From Botryllus schlosseri (Eukaryota), in assembly GCA_051294905.1 (NCBI GenBank), contig CM119371.1, positions 9,610,001 through 9,674,000 on the forward strand: a DNA stretch of 64,000 bases, in the 5' to 3' direction. The translations under genes were made by a program, and so were the position numbers. Under the pieces are notes generated by a model, which saw only the letters and a list, made by a program, of their open reading frames with translations, was not told the DNA's origin and searched no databases. Of this stretch, positions 16,759 through 23,389 are shown piece after piece. Position 1 is the first letter of the stretch. Every line of letters begins with the position of its first letter.

Positions 16759-18189
16759 GGGGGGGTGTGGGAACTTGAGTAGGTAGGGAAATTTGAGTAC
16801 ATTTGGCTAAAACTTCCGCTGGTCCAACATTTCTGCTTCAAATTTGTCAGTTCTGCCTTCATTCAGTAGCTCACTATGCAAGCTATAGATAAGACTAATA
16901 ACCAATTTCCTTGCAGGAAAATTATAGCTTACACATGCAATTGAAAATTTGTGACGCATTTTTTCATTTTTAACACTGTTTTTCAACTTCTTCACAGGTG
17001 ACATAAAAATGGTTGTTGCAAAACGATATACCACTCAAATAGTGATAGTTGATCATACTACAGGGTATAGCTATGGATATTGTCAATGGTGGTGTCAGTA
17101 AGTTTTAATTTACAAAATAATTTTTTGGGGTATTTTGGTTATAGTATGCCATAAGTGGCGGGTAAATTGAGTGTACCATTGAATGCGGAATTTCTCTGTC
17201 CCACGATTATCAGAGGGGTTGCAAATACTCAATTGAATCTTGTTATGCAGGTTTTGTTAAATATTAGAGAAATCAATTGTTAAAACAGTCAAAAGATATG
17301 CCCAGGAATTATAAGAAAAAGCGAACTCCTACATACACGACACAGCAATTGCAACAGGCAGTAAAGGAAATTAAGGGAGGAAAAAGCTGTTATACAGACT
17401 GGAAAGAAACTGGAATTCCATATGAAACTCTCAGGAGAAACTCAATTCGAGAAATGCAAAAAATTGGAGCCCCAACCGTACTTAGTAGTGAGGATGAGAA
17501 ATTGATCGCAATTGCATTGGGAACCCTGGCTGATGAAGGATTCCCATTTGATAGGAAAGATCTGAAACTGATGATCAAATCGTTCCTGGATTTGAATGGA
17601 GTTGAAACACGATTTGTGAACAATATACCAAGTATTGAATGGATCAGGAGCTTTGAGAAGAGAAATTCAGGGATCTCGAGAAGGAAGTCGGAGATTTTGA
17701 CGAAAGCAAGAGCAGAAGGCCTGTCATGTGAGGTAATTGATTCTTTTTTAAGTAAATACCTTGACATTCTGAAACAAAATAACTTGGAAAACCAACCCAC
17801 ACGTATATTCAATTTGGATGAAACTGGCCTAAGCACTGACCCCAGGTCTCAAAAAGTTTATGGGACAAAGGGAAGGAAGCAGTCATACATGATGCATTCA
17901 ACCTGTGGAAAAACAACATATTCCACACTATTTTGCTGCTCAGCCGCTGGATCCTATCTGCCTCCCTTCGTAGTCTACAAAGGCCTCAATATCTATGATA
18001 CTTGGACGTCTGGAGGCCCAGAGGGAACACATTATGCTGTTACTCTAAGTGGGTGGATGCAAGATTGTGTATTTGAGAATTGGCTCAAGGAATTTGCAAC
18101 TCAAATACAATCGTTGGATAAACCCTGCCTACTTATTCTGGATGGTCATGGCAGTCATATTACATATAAATGCTCTGAAATTTGCCGAG

Positions 18190-18323
18190 TGTGGTTTGCA
18201 TGCGTTGTATGTGCACCGGGACCTGCGAGAGGCACTGGTGTGGGGAGAACGTGAGAGCGGCGGCGGTGGTATGTCGGACTAAGTTTGCCTGTACTGATTC
18301 TGTTAATACAATTACTATCTACA
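18190..18323 (+). repeat. 5' LTR (134 bp)
   Basis: TGTGGTTTGC...CTATCTACA; identical by eye to 22222-22355. Confidence 0.95.
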
Positions 18324-18335
18324 AGCTATCGCGGC
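18324..18335 (+). promoter_or_regulatory. Non-canonical primer-binding site AGCTATCGCGGC
   Basis: Immediately follows the 5' LTR; lacks TGG; reverse complement GCCGCGATAGCT fits tRNA positions 1-12. Confidence 0.55.
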
Positions 18336-18338
18336 AAT

Positions 18339-19115
18339 ATGTCGACGGTGAGGATAACGGACATTATGCCTATGTATGTGGACTTCGCTACTTCGGGGGA
18401 TGTGGCTGTGTGGCTGGATAAATTTGAGACCGTTATGAAACTGCGAGGTAACAAGCCAGAAGAATATGTTCCTCTATTGTTGGACACTGCGGCGTTCTCA
18501 GTATATAGGCAATTAAGTGATGAGGATAAAAAGGAGTACAGTAAAGTAAAGACTGCTCTCTTGGCAGCATTTGGCGTCAATTGTTACGATGCGTACTGCC
18601 AGTTTCAGCGCAGGACTCTTCAAGAACGTGAGAGTGTTGATGTTTTCGTAGCTGACCTCCAGAGACTGGTTACTCTTGTGGGTATGGACCCTGCTGCTTC
18701 TGAACCGATAGTAAAGTGCGCTTTTGTGACTGGGCTGCCGATCGATGTGGCATGCCAGCTAAAGTCTCTTGCTGAAATTGAGAAACTGGAAATTGGTGAA
18801 TTGGTGGTACGAGCTAGAATGATCATGCCCACCAGGGTGCCCGTTGGCATGCTCTGTGCAGCTGGCACATACAAAGGAAAGACTTTTGAGTGCTTCTCTT
18901 GTGGGAAAGACGGACATATAGCACGCGAGTGCCCTAATAGGGATATTGGGAGACGGAGTTATGGCCGTGGGCTGCCGCCAATAAAGTGTTTTGAATGTGG
19001 TAACCCTGGTCATATAGCTCGGTTCTGCAAGAACGGTGCTACATGGCCAATCAATCAGGGAAACGGCAATGGGGAACGGTCAGCATCGGATGGGTTCCCC
19101 AGCCACCGACAGTGA
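18339..19115 (+). CDS. gag: Gag with two CCHC zinc knuckles
   Basis: First ATG after the LTR; [14 protein letters not shown] and [14 protein letters not shown]. Confidence 0.93.
19058..19101 (+). promoter_or_regulatory. -1 ribosomal frameshift signal (G GGA AAC plus stem-loop)
   Basis: In-frame X XXY YYZ heptamer at 19058-19064; stem TGGGGAAC (19070-19077) / GTTCCCCA (19094-19101); pol lies in the -1 frame and is open from this site to 19153. Confidence 0.75.
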
Positions 19116-22100
19116 GGAAAGAGGTGCTGCCAATCATTTCTGTAAAAATATTTTGAATATCTGTAGAAGCTCTCGTTGATAGTGGTTGCCAGAGATCAGT
19201 GGTGCGAGAAGACGTGTGTAAGCAATTGGGCGTGCCAGTGAGGGGACCAAAGCTAGTTGTGGAAATGTTGAATGGCGAATTAACATTTTGTCATGGTGAC
19301 GCGACAGTCAAACTGGAAATTGACGAAGTTGACCTCTGTATGGAAGTTTTAATAGCAACTCGTCTGGTTTGTAATGCAAAGGTGATTCTGGGGACGGATG
19401 TGATCGAGAGGATGGATGGGGTGTTTGTTGGTCCAGATCTTCGAGTACGGTTTGGTGCACTTCCCGCATATGTTGCTGTGGGAGTGAGTTGTCAAGAAGA
19501 AAATGAGAAGTTGAGTGAAGAAGAAGTTGAGAAGCCGATTGAAGTAGAAGAAGTCGAGAAGTTGGGTGAAGAAGAAGATGTGAAGTTGATTGAAGAAGAA
19601 GTCGAGAAGTTGAGGGAAGAAGAAGAAGATGAGAAGTTGATTGAAGAAGAAGTGGAGAAGCTGGTAATCGATGATAAAGATTTTAACGCTATTTTTGATG
19701 GTTCAAAGTGGGTTGTAGAGTGGAAATGGACGAATGAAGAACCAACCTTGTCAAACCGCTGTCCAGGGTACGCGATTCCACCTGAGTGCCAAGAAGAGTT
19801 CCATCATGAAGTGAATCAATGGATTCAAAATGGCTGGTTGGAAGAATACAACCCAGACGTTCATGGACGTCAAAAGGGTCTGATCCCTCTGATGGCAGTA
19901 AAACAACCGAACAAATCAAGAAAGGTGCGGCCAGTTATGGATTACCGCGAGATGAATAGGCATGTGATGAGTCATCCCGGTGCAGATGTTGTGGTGTGCC
20001 AGGAAAAACTGAGAGAATGGCGGAAGAAAGGCACACATGCGTATATGTTAGATCTGCAAAAAGCATATCTACAAATTCACGTTTCAGAGCGCTTGCACAC
20101 ATTTCAAATCGTGCAGCATGGCGAGAAGAAATACGTCATGACGCGTATGGGATTTGGCCTCAATGTTGCGCCAAAAGTAATGTCAAAGATCCTGTCGGTG
20201 GTGTTGTCGCAGAGTCAAGAGATGAAGCGTGGAACAGATCATTATATCGATGATATATTTGTTGATGCCAGTATTGTGGATGTGGAAACGGTGAGGAGGC
20301 ACTTATTACGGTATGGACTAAGAGCAAAGGAGCCTGTCCCATTGAACGAAGCACGGGTATTAGGACTGAGAGTCACTGCGACGGCTGCGGGGTCGTATGA
20401 ATGGGCCAGAGATGGAATCCTACCAGAGCCTGCTAAAGAATGGTCAAAGAGGCAGCTCTTTTCTATGTTCGGTAAACTTATCGGTCACTACCCTGTGGCA
20501 GGCTGGCTGAGGATTGCTTGCAGCTACGTAAAGCGCCTTGCTAATGAAGTGACATGGGACGAAACAGTACCACTTCATGTGTTACAACTAGCTGGCGAAA
20601 TCCTTGCAAGGGTGAAAGAGAAAGATCCGGTGGGAGGAATTTGGCAAGCTCCTGCTGGAGGAAGGGTGCAACTTTGGTGTGATGCGAGTAACCTAGCAAT
20701 TGGGTGTTGTCTAATGGTGGATGGCCATGTAGTGGAAGATGCGGCCTGGATGAGAAAGCAGGATGACGGTGCTCACATCAACGTCGCAGAATTGGAGGCT
20801 GTGGTGAAGGGACTGAATCTAGCGCTAAAATGGAAGGTAAGGAAAGTAGAGATTATCACTGATTCCGCAAGTGTCTACAATTGGGTGAGATCAATTTTGG
20901 AGGATTTGAACCGGCCAAGAGTGCATGGCTTAAGTGAAATGATTGTTAGAAGAAGGCTGGGATTGATGGCGCAGTTGATTGAAGAATATGATATGAAAGT
21001 CAGCATTCGTCTGGTTCCCTCTGCAAAAAACATAGCTAATGCTTTGACACGGGTACCACGGAGCTGGCACCCAAAGATTTGTGTGGGAGTTGCCACGCAA
21101 AGTCAAGCGGTGGAAGATCGTGTCAAGAGGATCCACGAAAAGCATCACCTGGGAACAGACTGAACATTGTATGTAGCAGAACGCTGCTTGGGGCGGGAAG
21201 TAAGCCTGGAAATGGTTAAACAAGTTGTTGACAATTGTAACATATGTCGCCAAATTGATCCTCATCCAGTCAAGTGGGAACACGGGCAGTTGTCGGTGGA
21301 TAAAGTATGGAGTAGGCTGGCATTAGACATTACATACGTTGGTGGGCAGCCTTACTTAAGTATGATTGATTGTGGTCCAAGTCGATTTGCGATATGGAGG
21401 AAAATAACAACCGAATCTACCGAACAAGTCATCCAGCATCTAGGCCAAGTGTTGCTGGAGCGTGGGGCTGTCGACGAAATTTTGAGTGACAATGGTAGTT
21501 GCTTCAAAAGTCACAAAATGTCACAATTTTTGTGGAATTGGGGAATTGGCCATGTATTCAGCTGTGCTTACAAACATTCCGGAAATTCGATTGTTGAAAG
21601 AAATCACAGGACCATCAAACGGATGGTGGCCAGGACTGGTGGTAGTGTGAGTGAAATGGTGTATTGGTATAATAATACCCCAAACGTTGAGAATGTCGTA
21701 CCAGCTGAGAGGGTATTTCGTTATGAGTCTACTCTTCCAGATGGAGAGCGGGGAGTAGCAAAAGACCGCAATTCCAGAAAGAAACATTTAAACCCATACA
21801 ACATCGGAGAACGTGTCTTTGTGAAGCCACCTAATGCGAGGTGTACATCTGTGTGGAACAAAGGAACTGTGACGGATATTGTATCGGACTCGGTTGTTGA
21901 AGTGAATGGGACGAACCGTCATATATCACATATAAGACGCGTAATGGGTTGCGGCCCAGATCAGGAACGAAGCCAGAGCAGAATGCCACATCTGATTGAC
22001 TTATTTTCAACTGATGACGAAAATGCTAGTGAATCGAGAATGGCTTCGGAAGGTGAACCGTTGGGGGAAGAATTGATGCCAGAAGTAGAACAAAGACCAT

Positions 22101-22150
22101 CTCGCAGAAGGGCACAACCCGGCTGGTTGGCAGACTTTGATATGGGATAG
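19064..22150 (+). pseudogene. pol: Pol (aspartic protease, RT, RNase H, integrase) with two in-frame TGA stops
   Basis: ALVDSG (PR); DLQKAYLQI, GFGLNVAP, YIDDIF (RT); WCDAS, ELEAV, ITDS (RH); HHLG...CNIC, LALD, SDNG, VERNHRTIK (IN). TGA at 19154-19156 and 21161-21163. Confidence 0.95.
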
Positions 22151-22212
22151 CATTATATTCTAGTTTGTTGCATTGTTTAGTGATTTGTTTCATTTCTTTT
22201 GATCTTGAGATC

Positions 22213-22221
22213 AGGGGGGTA
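22213..22221 (+). promoter_or_regulatory. Polypurine tract
   Basis: AGGGGGGTA immediately before the 3' LTR. Confidence 0.8.
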
Positions 22222-22355
22222 TGTGGTTTGCATGCGTTGTATGTGCACCGGGACCTGCGAGAGGCACTGGTGTGGGGAGAACGTGAGAGCGGCGGCGGTG
22301 GTATGTCGGACTAAGTTTGCCTGTACTGATTCTGTTAATACAATTACTATCTACA
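22222..22355 (+). repeat. 3' LTR (134 bp)
   Basis: Direct repeat of 18190-18323, followed by TSD CCGAG. Confidence 0.95.
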
Positions 22356-23389
22356 CCGAGATAACGGCATAATCTTATTTTGTCTTCCACCTCATTCGTC
22401 GCATGCTCTGCAGCCACTGGACGTCGGGGTTTTCAGGCCTTTGAAAATAGCCTGGAAGAATATTCTGAAAAACTGGGCCCGAGAAACACGAATGCAATCG
22501 GTATCAAAAGCCATATTTCCGACCCTACTGAAAAAATTGATGACTGAATTACAATCTAACTGGGCTGTGGGGGGGTTTAAAGGAAGTGGACTTTACCCAG
22601 TCAATGCTGACATAGTAAAAACAAGGCAGTTGATCGTGTTCAGCATGAAATTGTCGAAGAAAGCGATGTGGTGAAAAATTTGACACAGGCTATTACGAGA
22701 GTAGTGTCACTAGCAATTTCAAAAGAAACAAGAACTGCTTTAGATAATCACAATGCGAAACGGAGACTTGTTCAGGCCAAAACTGGTGAGGTGCTGACAT
22801 CGGAAGAGAGCATGGCCAGACTTCAAGAGGAGGAGACAGTAAGAAAGCTTAAGCGCAGAGGTGGAAAAACCAATAAAGTTGTGGCCATAATTCCGACGCA
22901 ACTTTGAGAAATACATGAAAAATCGCCTTGAACGCCATTGAAACAAGCACTTGAGCTATCCTGTTTTGGGTGGATCCATCTGACCGTGACCATTCTGCCG
23001 GCTAACAATGGGAGAACAATCGAGTCGTCACTCCAGTCATACTCTACAGTGCCACTGAAGGAGACCATTGATATTTGTGCGGACGGGCTATTTTAACGAA
23101 ATATATTGGTATAACGCCATTTTATTAATATTCAATGAAGAGTTGGTAAACCGTACGTAATTCCCTGAACTGAGACCCGATAAGACCTTTGTGAGTCGTA
23201 TATTTGTCGTGTGAACGTAGATAACAGAATATGAAATCGTGCGATGTTTTGTGCATGTACTCTCTCGCAGCTATGATAAATATGCGTATGTAATACCACG
23301 TAGAGATTCATTCATTCATTATTCGCTGATTCGGAAGTCCGTTGCATTGTCGTACGTGCGATACAGCTGATCTCATCTGTACCTTTACG

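What the first reader, a model, noticed from the sequence alone, without database searches (positions are those of the whole stretch)
18324..18335. Gypsy PBS complementary to the 5' end of a tRNA: possible new priming mode
Seen: the 5' LTR ends ...TACA and is followed directly by AGCTATCGCGGC, with no TGG. Its reverse complement GCCGCGATAGCT parses as a 7-nt acceptor strand (GCCGCGA) plus U8, A9 and D-stem G10-C11-U12, and the match would end exactly at tRNA position 1. The LTR has no complement, so Tf1-style self-priming is not supported. Known: most LTR elements prime from the tRNA 3' CCA end; copia/Ty5 use an anticodon-cleaved tRNAiMet half; tRNA-Phe genes begin GCCG...ATAGCTCAG. Inference: reverse transcription is primed by a 12-nt 5' tRNA fragment, or by a tRNA bound through its 5' end and cut in the D-arm, possibly by the element's RNase H. 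The LTRs are identical, so the family has replicated recently with this site.
Basis: partly seen in the sequence, partly recalled or inferred. Interest (0 to 1): 0.8.

Follow-up and report, generated by a model that had tools for sequence, protein, structure and literature searches.

The report
Retrotransposon primer site matching tRNA-Phe 5' end
A small jumping gene, like dozens of related families in other animals, carries at its primer site 12 bases that pair with the first 12 bases of the host's phenylalanine tRNA instead of the usual tRNA tail, which suggests a way of starting reverse transcription that I could not find described.

Summary
A 4166-bp LTR retrotransposon (18190-22355) has identical 134-bp LTRs and a CCGAG target duplication. 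Directly after the LTR-terminal CA it carries AGCTATCGCGGC and no TGG.

All 68 tRNA-Phe-GAA genes of this genome begin GCCGCGATAGCT.

- **Conservation:** the 12-mer is identical in at least four diverged families of this genome (gag 36-50% identical). Both flanks are unalignable, and conservation stops exactly at tRNA position 1.
- **Other organisms:** about 50 non-redundant relatives all show CA|AGCTA+7. The acceptor-stem bases change with the source. One example is AGCTATTTCGGC in a leafhopper and a bryozoan, which matches the Drosophila and human tRNA-Phe 5' end. One lineage instead matches tRNA-Lys-CUU nt 1-12.
- **Alternatives:** none of the informative loci has a 3'-CCA site. Self-priming complementarity is at chance level.

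Most likely the first 12 nt of tRNA-Phe, ending at U12 in the D-stem, prime minus-strand synthesis. How the cut is made is inferred, possibly a Tf1-like RNase H cut, and no biochemical evidence exists.

The "Gypsy" label is only approximate, because this is a divergent Ty3/gypsy-like clade. I found no prior description, but older subscription papers were out of reach. A word search of this genome's earlier scan notes, the only ones that tool covers, found no such note.

The parts
18185..18189 (.). Target-site duplication CCGAG (left copy)
   Evidence: the same 5 nt flank both LTRs. The X1 contig joins 18184 to 22356 with 5 shared letters.
18190..18323 (+). 5' LTR, 134 bp, TGTGG...CTACA
   Evidence: 100% identical to 22222-22355. 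It contains no complement of the primer site.
18324..18335 (+). Primer binding site AGCTATCGCGGC, the reverse complement of nt 1-12 of host tRNA-Phe-GAA
   Evidence: One search gives the sequence. Searches give the tRNA-Phe genes. Searches show conservation. Searches show covariation abroad.
18339..19115 (+). gag ORF with two CCHC zinc knuckles
   Evidence: PF00098, E 2e-11.
19058..19064 (+). In-phase slippery heptamer G GGA AAC, a candidate -1 frameshift site from gag into pol
   Evidence: This is inferred from sequence only.
19157..21160 (+). pol: protease (VDSG), reverse transcriptase (YIDD), DUF7047 and RNase H. In this copy an in-frame stop precedes it at 19154-19156.
   Evidence: The fold is closest to Ty3/gypsy polyproteins and to retroviral RT p66.
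21167..22150 (+). Integrase part of pol (rve core), in the same frame as RT-RNase H but cut off by an in-frame stop at 21161-21163 in this copy
22207..22219 (+). Polypurine tract GAGATCAGGGGGG, 2 nt before the 3' LTR
   Evidence: Relatives L091 and L092 have a similar G-run before the LTR.
22222..22355 (+). 3' LTR
22356..22360 (.). Target-site duplication CCGAG (right copy)

Best explanation
The 12 nt after the 5' LTR are the minus-strand primer binding site of a compact Ty3/gypsy-like LTR retrotransposon. They pair with nt 1-12 of the host's tRNA-Phe-GAA: the acceptor strand G1-A7, then U8, A9 and D-stem G10-U12. The primer's 3'-OH must therefore be U12, so DNA synthesis starts at the last base of the LTR. 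The primer is the 5'-terminal 12 nt of the tRNA. Shown: exact complementarity to the host tRNA, conservation limited to exactly these 12 nt, co-variation with source, and absence of any other primer site. Inferred: the tRNA's acceptor and D stems are melted, as in ordinary tRNA priming; the 5' strand anneals; the rest of the tRNA is removed by a cut between nt 12 and 13. My preferred version of the cut (about 35-40%) is one by the element's own RT/RNase H at the end of the 12-bp RNA:RNA duplex. This would be the trans equivalent of the cut that makes the 11-nt self-primer of Tf1. If plus-strand strong-stop synthesis copies the primer to its 5' end, that would explain why the conserved block stops exactly at tRNA position 1 and why the site tracks the host tRNA.
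For: The host tRNA-Phe-GAA (L012:1501-1573) starts GCCGCGATAGCT, and so do all 68 exact gene bodies. CA+12-mer occurs 83 times against 0 in the control. At least four diverged LTR families of this genome (gag 36-50% identical, RT core about 63-66%) keep 12/12 identity while the flanks are unalignable. Among 55 non-redundant junctions, information content falls from 1.6-2 bits inside the block to 0.4 bits or less at -4 and at +13. Position 12 was not fixed by the search pattern and is C in 52 of 55. Abroad, a leafhopper (L092) and a bryozoan (L093) have AGCTATTTCGGC. This is the complement of GCCGAAATAGCT, the tRNA-Phe 5' end shown by Drosophila probes (PMC7038984 and PMC6542536). Other sources carry CTAGGC, CCCGGC, CGCGGC or AGCTACCTCGGC, uniform within 33 of the 35 source accessions that gave a junction, and uniform across deeply separated lineages in one source: JAAUYE01 holds L108/L110 and L125. 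L133 has AGCTAGCCGGGC, the complement of nt 1-12 of tRNA-Lys-CUU (PMC12140204), and is sister to the Phe-type L125 with 100/98 support. The site type changes at least 4 times across well-supported branches. All of the roughly 58 foreign loci whose sequence reaches the LTR/internal junction show this type of site and none shows a TGG site; 3 further degenerate loci were uninformative. The predicted 12-bp duplexes are stable, -18.7 to -25.5 kcal/mol.
Against: There is no biochemical evidence: no primer was mapped and no 12-nt fragment was seen. RNA runs held almost no reads of the element. The host tRNA was verified directly only for this genome, and by literature only for insects in general; the hosts of the metagenome contigs are unknown. 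No nuclease is known that cuts tRNA between nt 12 and 13. A 12-nt primer is short. RNase H cleavage of an RNA:RNA duplex is documented only for Tf1 (from my knowledge: Levin 1996). In Ty1 and Ty3 the site is inherited rather than recopied from the tRNA (review PMC7472051), so the 'recopying' step may not apply. The three own-genome families placed on the RT tree are monophyletic there, so their shared site is partly common descent.
Confidence: 0.72

Rival explanations
1. The site and the tRNA are the same, but the primer is a pre-existing 12-nt 5' fragment of tRNA-Phe. A host nuclease makes it and it is packaged into particles. The element's RNase H is not involved.
For: The complementarity data fit this as well as they fit in-situ cleavage. 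5' tRNA fragments are abundant small RNAs in animals (for example PMC12140204).
Against: From my knowledge, the described short 5' fragments end in the D-loop at 14-16 nt. A 15-nt fragment would leave three unpaired 3' bases opposite the LTR's ACA and could not prime. No 12-nt species has been reported. Selective packaging of a 12-mer is hard to picture.
Confidence: 0.18
2. The 12-mer binds the tRNA-Phe 5' strand, or is a target of 5' tRNA fragments, for some purpose other than priming, such as packaging, translational control or silencing. Minus-strand synthesis would then start in some other, unrecognised way.
For: Complementarity alone cannot show which 3'-OH is extended. 3' tRNA fragments are known to target primer sites for silencing (PMC7472051).
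Against: The block sits at exactly the position a primer site must occupy, with no gap after the LTR's CA, in every family. No other candidate primer site exists: there is no TGG and no LTR complement. A site kept only as a silencing target would be selected against, not conserved.
Confidence: 0.07
3. Tf1/sushi-type self-priming: the site pairs with the start of the element's own transcript.
For: Earlier scan notes report other LTR clades in this genome whose primer site appears to pair with their own LTR (s1-234245, s1-268358; not checked here). The 12-nt length resembles Tf1's 11-nt primer.
Against: The best complement of the site in the LTR is 7/12 in the window element and 7/12 in L091, equal to shuffled LTRs, and there is no exact complementary word of 5 nt or more.
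Confidence: 0.02
4. A chance match or a decayed or deleted ordinary primer site in this one copy.
For: None beyond the shortness of 12 nt.
Against: The count is 83 against 0 in the control. The 12-mer is identical across families and has analogous sites in about 50 foreign families.
Confidence: 0.01

Closest known systems
tRNA-fragment priming of copia, 1731, Ty5 and Tca2 (Ty1/copia group)
   Same: The primer is thought to be a 5'-derived piece of a host tRNA whose 3'-OH is created by a cut inside the tRNA. The site has no TGG. (From my knowledge: Kikuchi et al. 1986; Ke et al. 1999. An internal-region site is also mentioned in PMC5445492.)
   Different: In those elements the tRNA is initiator Met (or Arg), the cut is in the anticodon stem at about nt 39, and the site pairs with an internal stretch. 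Here the tRNA is Phe (Lys in one lineage), the 3' end is U12 in the D-stem, and the site pairs with the extreme 5' terminus, so the whole primer is 12 nt. The elements here have the PR-RT-RH-IN order and a gypsy-like fold, not copia.
Self-priming of Tf1, Tj1 and the sushi group (Ty3/gypsy chromoviruses)
   Same: A short duplex (11 nt in Tf1, 12 nt here) forms between the primer site and the 5' terminus of an RNA. A cut at the end of that duplex must create the primer (PMC4600332). In Tf1 the element's RNase H makes the cut (my knowledge).
   Different: In Tf1 the RNA is the element's own transcript. Here the LTR has no complement and the partner is a host tRNA. Neither the cut nor the enzyme is shown here.
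Canonical priming by the tRNA 3' CCA end (Ty3, gypsy, retroviruses, most LTR elements)
   Same: A host tRNA is selected by base pairing to a site directly after the 5' LTR. The site co-evolves with the tRNA, and primer switching between tRNAs occurs (PMC7472051).
   Different: The opposite strand of the acceptor stem is used. There is no TGG, and the natural 3'-OH of the tRNA cannot be the priming end.

Membership tests
LTR retrotransposon (order Ortervirales type) | Two direct LTRs ending TG...CA, flanked by a short target-site duplication | tested here: met
   134-bp identical LTRs running TGTGG...CTACA, with a 5-bp CCGAG duplication.
LTR retrotransposon (order Ortervirales type) | gag with zinc knuckles plus pol with protease, RT, RNase H and DDE integrase, and a polypurine tract before the 3' LTR | tested here: met
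   This copy has two in-frame stops in pol.
Ty3/gypsy (Metaviridae) | Domain order PR-RT-RH-IN | tested here: met
   RVT_1, DUF7047 and RNase H precede rve; relatives carry Asp_protease_2 in front.
Ty3/gypsy (Metaviridae) | RT/RNase H groups with Metaviridae rather than Belpaoviridae, Retroviridae or Pseudoviridae | tested here: inconclusive
   The best Swiss-Prot fold matches are 297, Tf2, gypsy, 17.6 and Ty3 (E 5e-24 to 1e-18), ahead of HERV-K and Ty1/Ty4. Against this, the Pfam gypsy RNase H model RT_RNaseH reaches only E 0.04, RVT_3 and RNase_H score better, and there is no sequence hit to any solved RT. There is no Peptidase_A17 (Bel/Pao) hit. No reference phylogeny was built.
Canonical 3'-end tRNA priming | Site begins TGG and is complementary to the 3' terminal 8-18 nt of a tRNA | tested here: not met
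   there is no TGG after the LTR in any family. The expected tRNA-Phe 3' complement is absent.
copia/Ty5-type tRNA half priming | Site complementary to an internal stretch of initiator tRNA-Met ending in the anticodon stem | tested here: not met
   The site is the complement of nt 1-12 of tRNA-Phe-GAA.
copia/Ty5-type tRNA half priming | Primer is a 5' fragment of a tRNA produced by internal cleavage | not testable with these tools
   The geometry requires it, because the 3'-OH must be U12. No RNA data could be obtained.
Tf1/sushi self-priming | [quoted passage not shown] | tested here: not met
   the best match is 7/12, equal to shuffled LTRs, in two families.

The most novel reading that the evidence does not exclude
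A whole clade of compact animal LTR retrotransposons uses a fourth mode of minus-strand priming. The element's RT/RNase H recognises the 12-bp RNA:RNA duplex between its primer site and the 5' terminus of tRNA-Phe (or tRNA-Lys). It then cuts the tRNA after nt 12, measured from the RNA 5' end, and extends U12. This would be Tf1-style primer making carried out in trans on a host tRNA. It would link self-priming and tRNA priming mechanistically. It would also make 5' tRNA fragments natural antagonists of these elements.
Probability: 0.3. Interest if true: 0.85.

Novelty: new variant of a known kind. Interest (0 to 1): 0.8.

Why it matters
**A missing case of primer choice.** Primer choice is a defining step of retroelement replication. 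Only three solutions are established for LTR elements: the tRNA 3' end, an anticodon-cleaved tRNA half, and self-priming. A site that pairs with the extreme 5' end of tRNA-Phe, kept across many families and several animal groups and following the host's tRNA, would be a fourth. It is directly testable with recombinant RT/RNase H, a short template and tRNA-Phe.

**Annotation.** As far as I know, the usual annotation programs look only for tRNA 3' ends. If so, they would report this clade as lacking a primer site.

**Host control.** 5' tRNA fragments, whose functions are much debated, would be perfectly complementary to these sites. This mirrors how 3' fragments restrain ordinary LTR elements.

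Tried and rejected
- **Self-priming.** I searched the LTRs for a complement of the site. The result was at chance level.
- **The other genome copies of the 12-mer.** Most of the 533 genome hits looked like a possible second element class with a 15-nt match. They are internal to a 1.26-kb DNA transposon with terminal inverted repeats, and to another non-LTR repeat. They are unrelated to priming.
- **RNA evidence.** One call of read laying on two RNA runs and two contig sets found almost no RNA reads and no transcript ends. It says nothing on expression or on the R boundaries. The 'empty site' joint may come from a paralogous copy of the host transposon, so I do not claim insertion polymorphism.
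- **tRNA genes near foreign relatives.** I looked for them to verify those hosts' tRNA-Phe and found none.
- **Literature.** Ten searches found no description of a primer site complementary to a tRNA 5' terminus. Goodwin et al. 2003 (Yeast 20:493) is cited in PMC4139406 as reporting a 'distinct' minus-strand mechanism in the gypsy-like Tca3, but it could not be read. The Gmr1 papers of the same group were also out of reach.
- **Sequence search against solved structures.** It gave nothing useful.

Full report
**What is there**

Window 18190-22355 is a 4166-bp LTR retrotransposon.
- Its LTRs (18190-18323 and 22222-22355) are 134 bp, identical, and run TGTGG...CTACA.
- CCGAG flanks both ends.
- A G-rich polypurine run (22207-22219) lies 2 nt before the 3' LTR.
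- The element interrupts a pogo-like DDE_1 transposase reading frame. Removing the element and one CCGAG restores that frame.
- A contig of run X1 joins 18184 to 22356 over a single CCGAG. The host sequence is itself a repeat, so this may be a paralogous copy rather than an empty allele. Either way it confirms the boundaries.

Inside lie the following features.
- gag (18339-19115) has two CCHC knuckles.
- An in-phase G GGA AAC heptamer sits at 19058 and could shift ribosomes into the pol frame.
- pol holds protease, RT (YIDD), Pfam DUF7047, RNase H and an rve integrase.
- This copy has in-frame stops in pol at 19154-19156 and 21161-21163. Contigs of other copies differ at both codons.

Directly after the LTR's terminal CA, at 18324-18335, stands AGCTATCGCGGC. 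There is no TGG.

The reverse complement GCCGCGATAGCT occurs 533 times in the 495.5-Mb genome, against 13 for the reversed control. ARAGORN finds tRNA-Phe-GAA genes beginning with exactly these 12 bases (L012 and L013, 1501-1573). A pattern search for the tRNA-Phe body shows that all 68 exact copies start GCCGCGATAGCT.

The host's tRNA-Phe differs from the form of Drosophila and human (GCCGAAATAGCT) at positions 5 and 6. Published 5' probes confirm the Drosophila form (PMC7038984 and PMC6542536). The element matches the host's own version.

Most of the other genome hits are irrelevant. About 380 lie inside a 1.26-kb DNA transposon with 15-bp terminal inverted repeats. A few lie in another non-LTR repeat.

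**Conservation inside this genome**

CA followed by the 12-mer occurs 83 times, against 0 in the control. Of 30 sampled places, 28 are LTR/internal junctions. They belong to at least four families whose LTR ends and leader sequences cannot be aligned with each other.

A search with the window's gag protein finds these families at 36-50% identity. Of the 30 loci fetched, 27 carry the identical 12-mer. Two decayed copies differ near its last bases, and one locus was not resolved. The base after the block varies (a, c, g or t), so conservation ends exactly where the tRNA ends, at position 1.

**Relatives elsewhere**

The pol protein has hundreds of relatives, mostly on contigs of about 4 kb from animal-associated assemblies. 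Named ones come from a bryozoan and a leafhopper.
- In the leafhopper locus L092 and the bryozoan locus L093 the LTR's CA is followed by AGCTATTTCGGC, the complement of GCCGAAATAGCT.
- An unnamed assembly (L091) has AGCTATCCCGGC after a 230-bp LTR.
- A scan of metagenome contigs gave 80 more loci. All loci whose sequence reaches the junction show CA|AGCTA plus seven bases. Counted over all 83 foreign loci (L091-L173), AGCTATTTCGGC occurs 18 times, AGCTATCTAGGC 14, AGCTATCGCGGC 10, AGCTATCCCGGC 5 and AGCTACCTCGGC 4, plus a few singletons.
- No locus shows a TGG site.

Over 55 non-redundant junctions the information content is high only from -3 to +12. It drops to 0.4 bits or less on both sides. 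Position 12 was not fixed by my search pattern and is C in 52 of 55.

**The site follows the source, not the element's ancestry**

Within one source, diverged families share one site type.
- JAAUYE01 has three elements, all AGCTACCTCGGC.
- CAJIBL01 has three, all AGCTATTTCGGC.
- ERZ1740065 has three, all AGCTATTTCGGC.
- Ga0075479 has three, all AGCTATCGCGGC.

On an RT tree the site type changes at least four times across well-supported branches.
- L096 (CGC type) is sister to L094/L095 (TTT type).
- L125 shares its site with L108/L110 of the same source. Yet it is sister, at 100/98 support, to L133.
- L133's site, AGCTAGCCGGGC, is the complement of nt 1-12 of tRNA-Lys-CUU (PMC12140204).

A switch to the same 12 positions of another tRNA argues that the rule is 'the 5' terminal 12 nt of a tRNA', not a fixed motif.

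One caveat applies. Only this genome's tRNA-Phe was checked directly. The hosts of the metagenome contigs are unknown, and no tRNA genes lay on the fetched loci.

**Alternatives**

Self-priming fails. The best complement of the site in the LTR is 7/12 in two families, which equals shuffled sequence. Chance and a decayed ordinary site are excluded by the counts above.

A role other than priming cannot be formally excluded. However, the block occupies exactly the primer position in every family, and no other candidate site exists.

**Mechanism**

*Geometry.* This follows directly from the sequence. The primer's 3' end pairs with the first base of the site, so the extended 3'-OH is U12 of the tRNA and the primer's 5' end is G1.

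*Stability.* The 12-bp duplexes are predicted at -18.7 to -25.5 kcal/mol.

*Inferred steps.* The tRNA must be cut between nt 12 and 13, inside the D-stem. From my knowledge, known short 5' fragments end in the D-loop at 14-16 nt. Their last bases would be unpaired opposite the LTR's ACA, so they could not prime.

*Preferred version of the cut.* I favour a cut made on the annealed tRNA by the element's own RNase H at the end of the RNA:RNA duplex (about 35-40%). Tf1 does this on its 11-nt self-primer (mechanism cited in PMC4600332; the enzyme is from my knowledge). A pre-made 12-nt fragment is the main alternative (about 20%).

*Modified bases.* Also from my knowledge, nt 1-12 of eukaryotic tRNA-Phe carry only m2G10, which does not block copying, and both Phe and Lys-CUU have A9 rather than a methylated G9. 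That would allow plus-strand synthesis to copy the primer to its end, which would explain the sharp edge at position 1. Whether this clade recopies or simply inherits its site is open, because Ty1 and Ty3 inherit theirs (PMC7472051).

**Classification**

- The domain order and an AlphaFold model (pLDDT 79.5) are closest to the Ty3/gypsy polyproteins 297, Tf2, gypsy, 17.6 and Ty3. HERV-K and Ty1/Ty4 come next. In the PDB the closest structures are retroviral RTs.
- By sequence the clade is remote. It has weak RVT_1, its own DUF7047, RNase H hits to RVT_3 and RNase_H rather than the gypsy model, no Bel/Pao protease, and no hit to solved RTs.

I call it a divergent Ty3/gypsy-like clade, with its formal placement untested.

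**Novelty**

Ten full-text searches found no report of a primer site complementary to a tRNA 5' terminus. The known exceptions are anticodon-cleaved tRNA halves in copia-type elements, internal-region sites, self-priming, and a hairpin site in fungal GalEa (PMC5445492).

The library lacks most older subscription papers. In particular, I could not read Goodwin et al. 2003, which is said to report a 'distinct' minus-strand mechanism in Tca3. I therefore rate this a new variant of tRNA priming, with about 70-75% confidence that the site works as described. Interest is high because the feature is clade-wide, precise and easily tested.

I did not test either statement. A word search of this genome's earlier scan notes, the only ones that tool covers, found no note of this kind of site.

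Noticed in passing
L028:1137-2393 (own genome); about 380 copies genome-wide: A 1.26-kb non-autonomous DNA transposon with perfect 15-bp terminal inverted repeats (CAGTGCTCTTCAACC) carries internally a 15-nt identity to the 5' end of tRNA-Phe (GCCGCGATAGCTCAG). It accounts for most genome hits of the 12-mer. Whether this is a captured tRNA piece or chance is unknown.
   Followed up: partly
G000 contig C12, about 26.00-26.16 Mb; L013:1420-1573: About 45 of the 68 tRNA-Phe-GAA genes lie in one tandem array with a period of about 2-2.7 kb. Elsewhere a tRNA-Ile-AAT and a tRNA-Phe gene lie only 6 nt apart, a possible dicistronic pair.
   Followed up: no
window 17277-18189 and 22356 onward: The retrotransposon sits inside a pogo-like DDE_1 transposase ORF. 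The frame continues across the insertion once the element and one CCGAG are removed.
   Followed up: partly
window 19058-19064, 19154-19156, 21161-21163: An in-phase G GGA AAC heptamer lies 55 nt before the gag stop, a candidate -1 frameshift site. This copy has two in-frame stops in pol despite identical LTRs. Contigs from other copies differ at both codons.
   Followed up: partly
position +13 after the LTR in 55 non-redundant families: The base right after the 12-nt site is A in 29 and C in 17 of 55 families, although the tRNA has no base there. This is unexplained. It could reflect the start-codon context or non-templated addition at the primer's end.
   Followed up: no
window 18300-18323 and the LTR ends of L031, L035, L046, L047: An AATACA/AATATA-like hexamer lies 12-20 nt before the LTR end in all own-genome families. 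If it is the poly(A) signal, U5 is only a few nucleotides long.
   Followed up: no
L099, L100, L108, L131, L133 (metagenome contigs): Many contigs of about 4 kb are circular permutations, with the same LTR-site junction or the same ends appearing twice. This probably comes from assembly through collapsed LTRs, though 1-LTR circles are not excluded.
   Followed up: no
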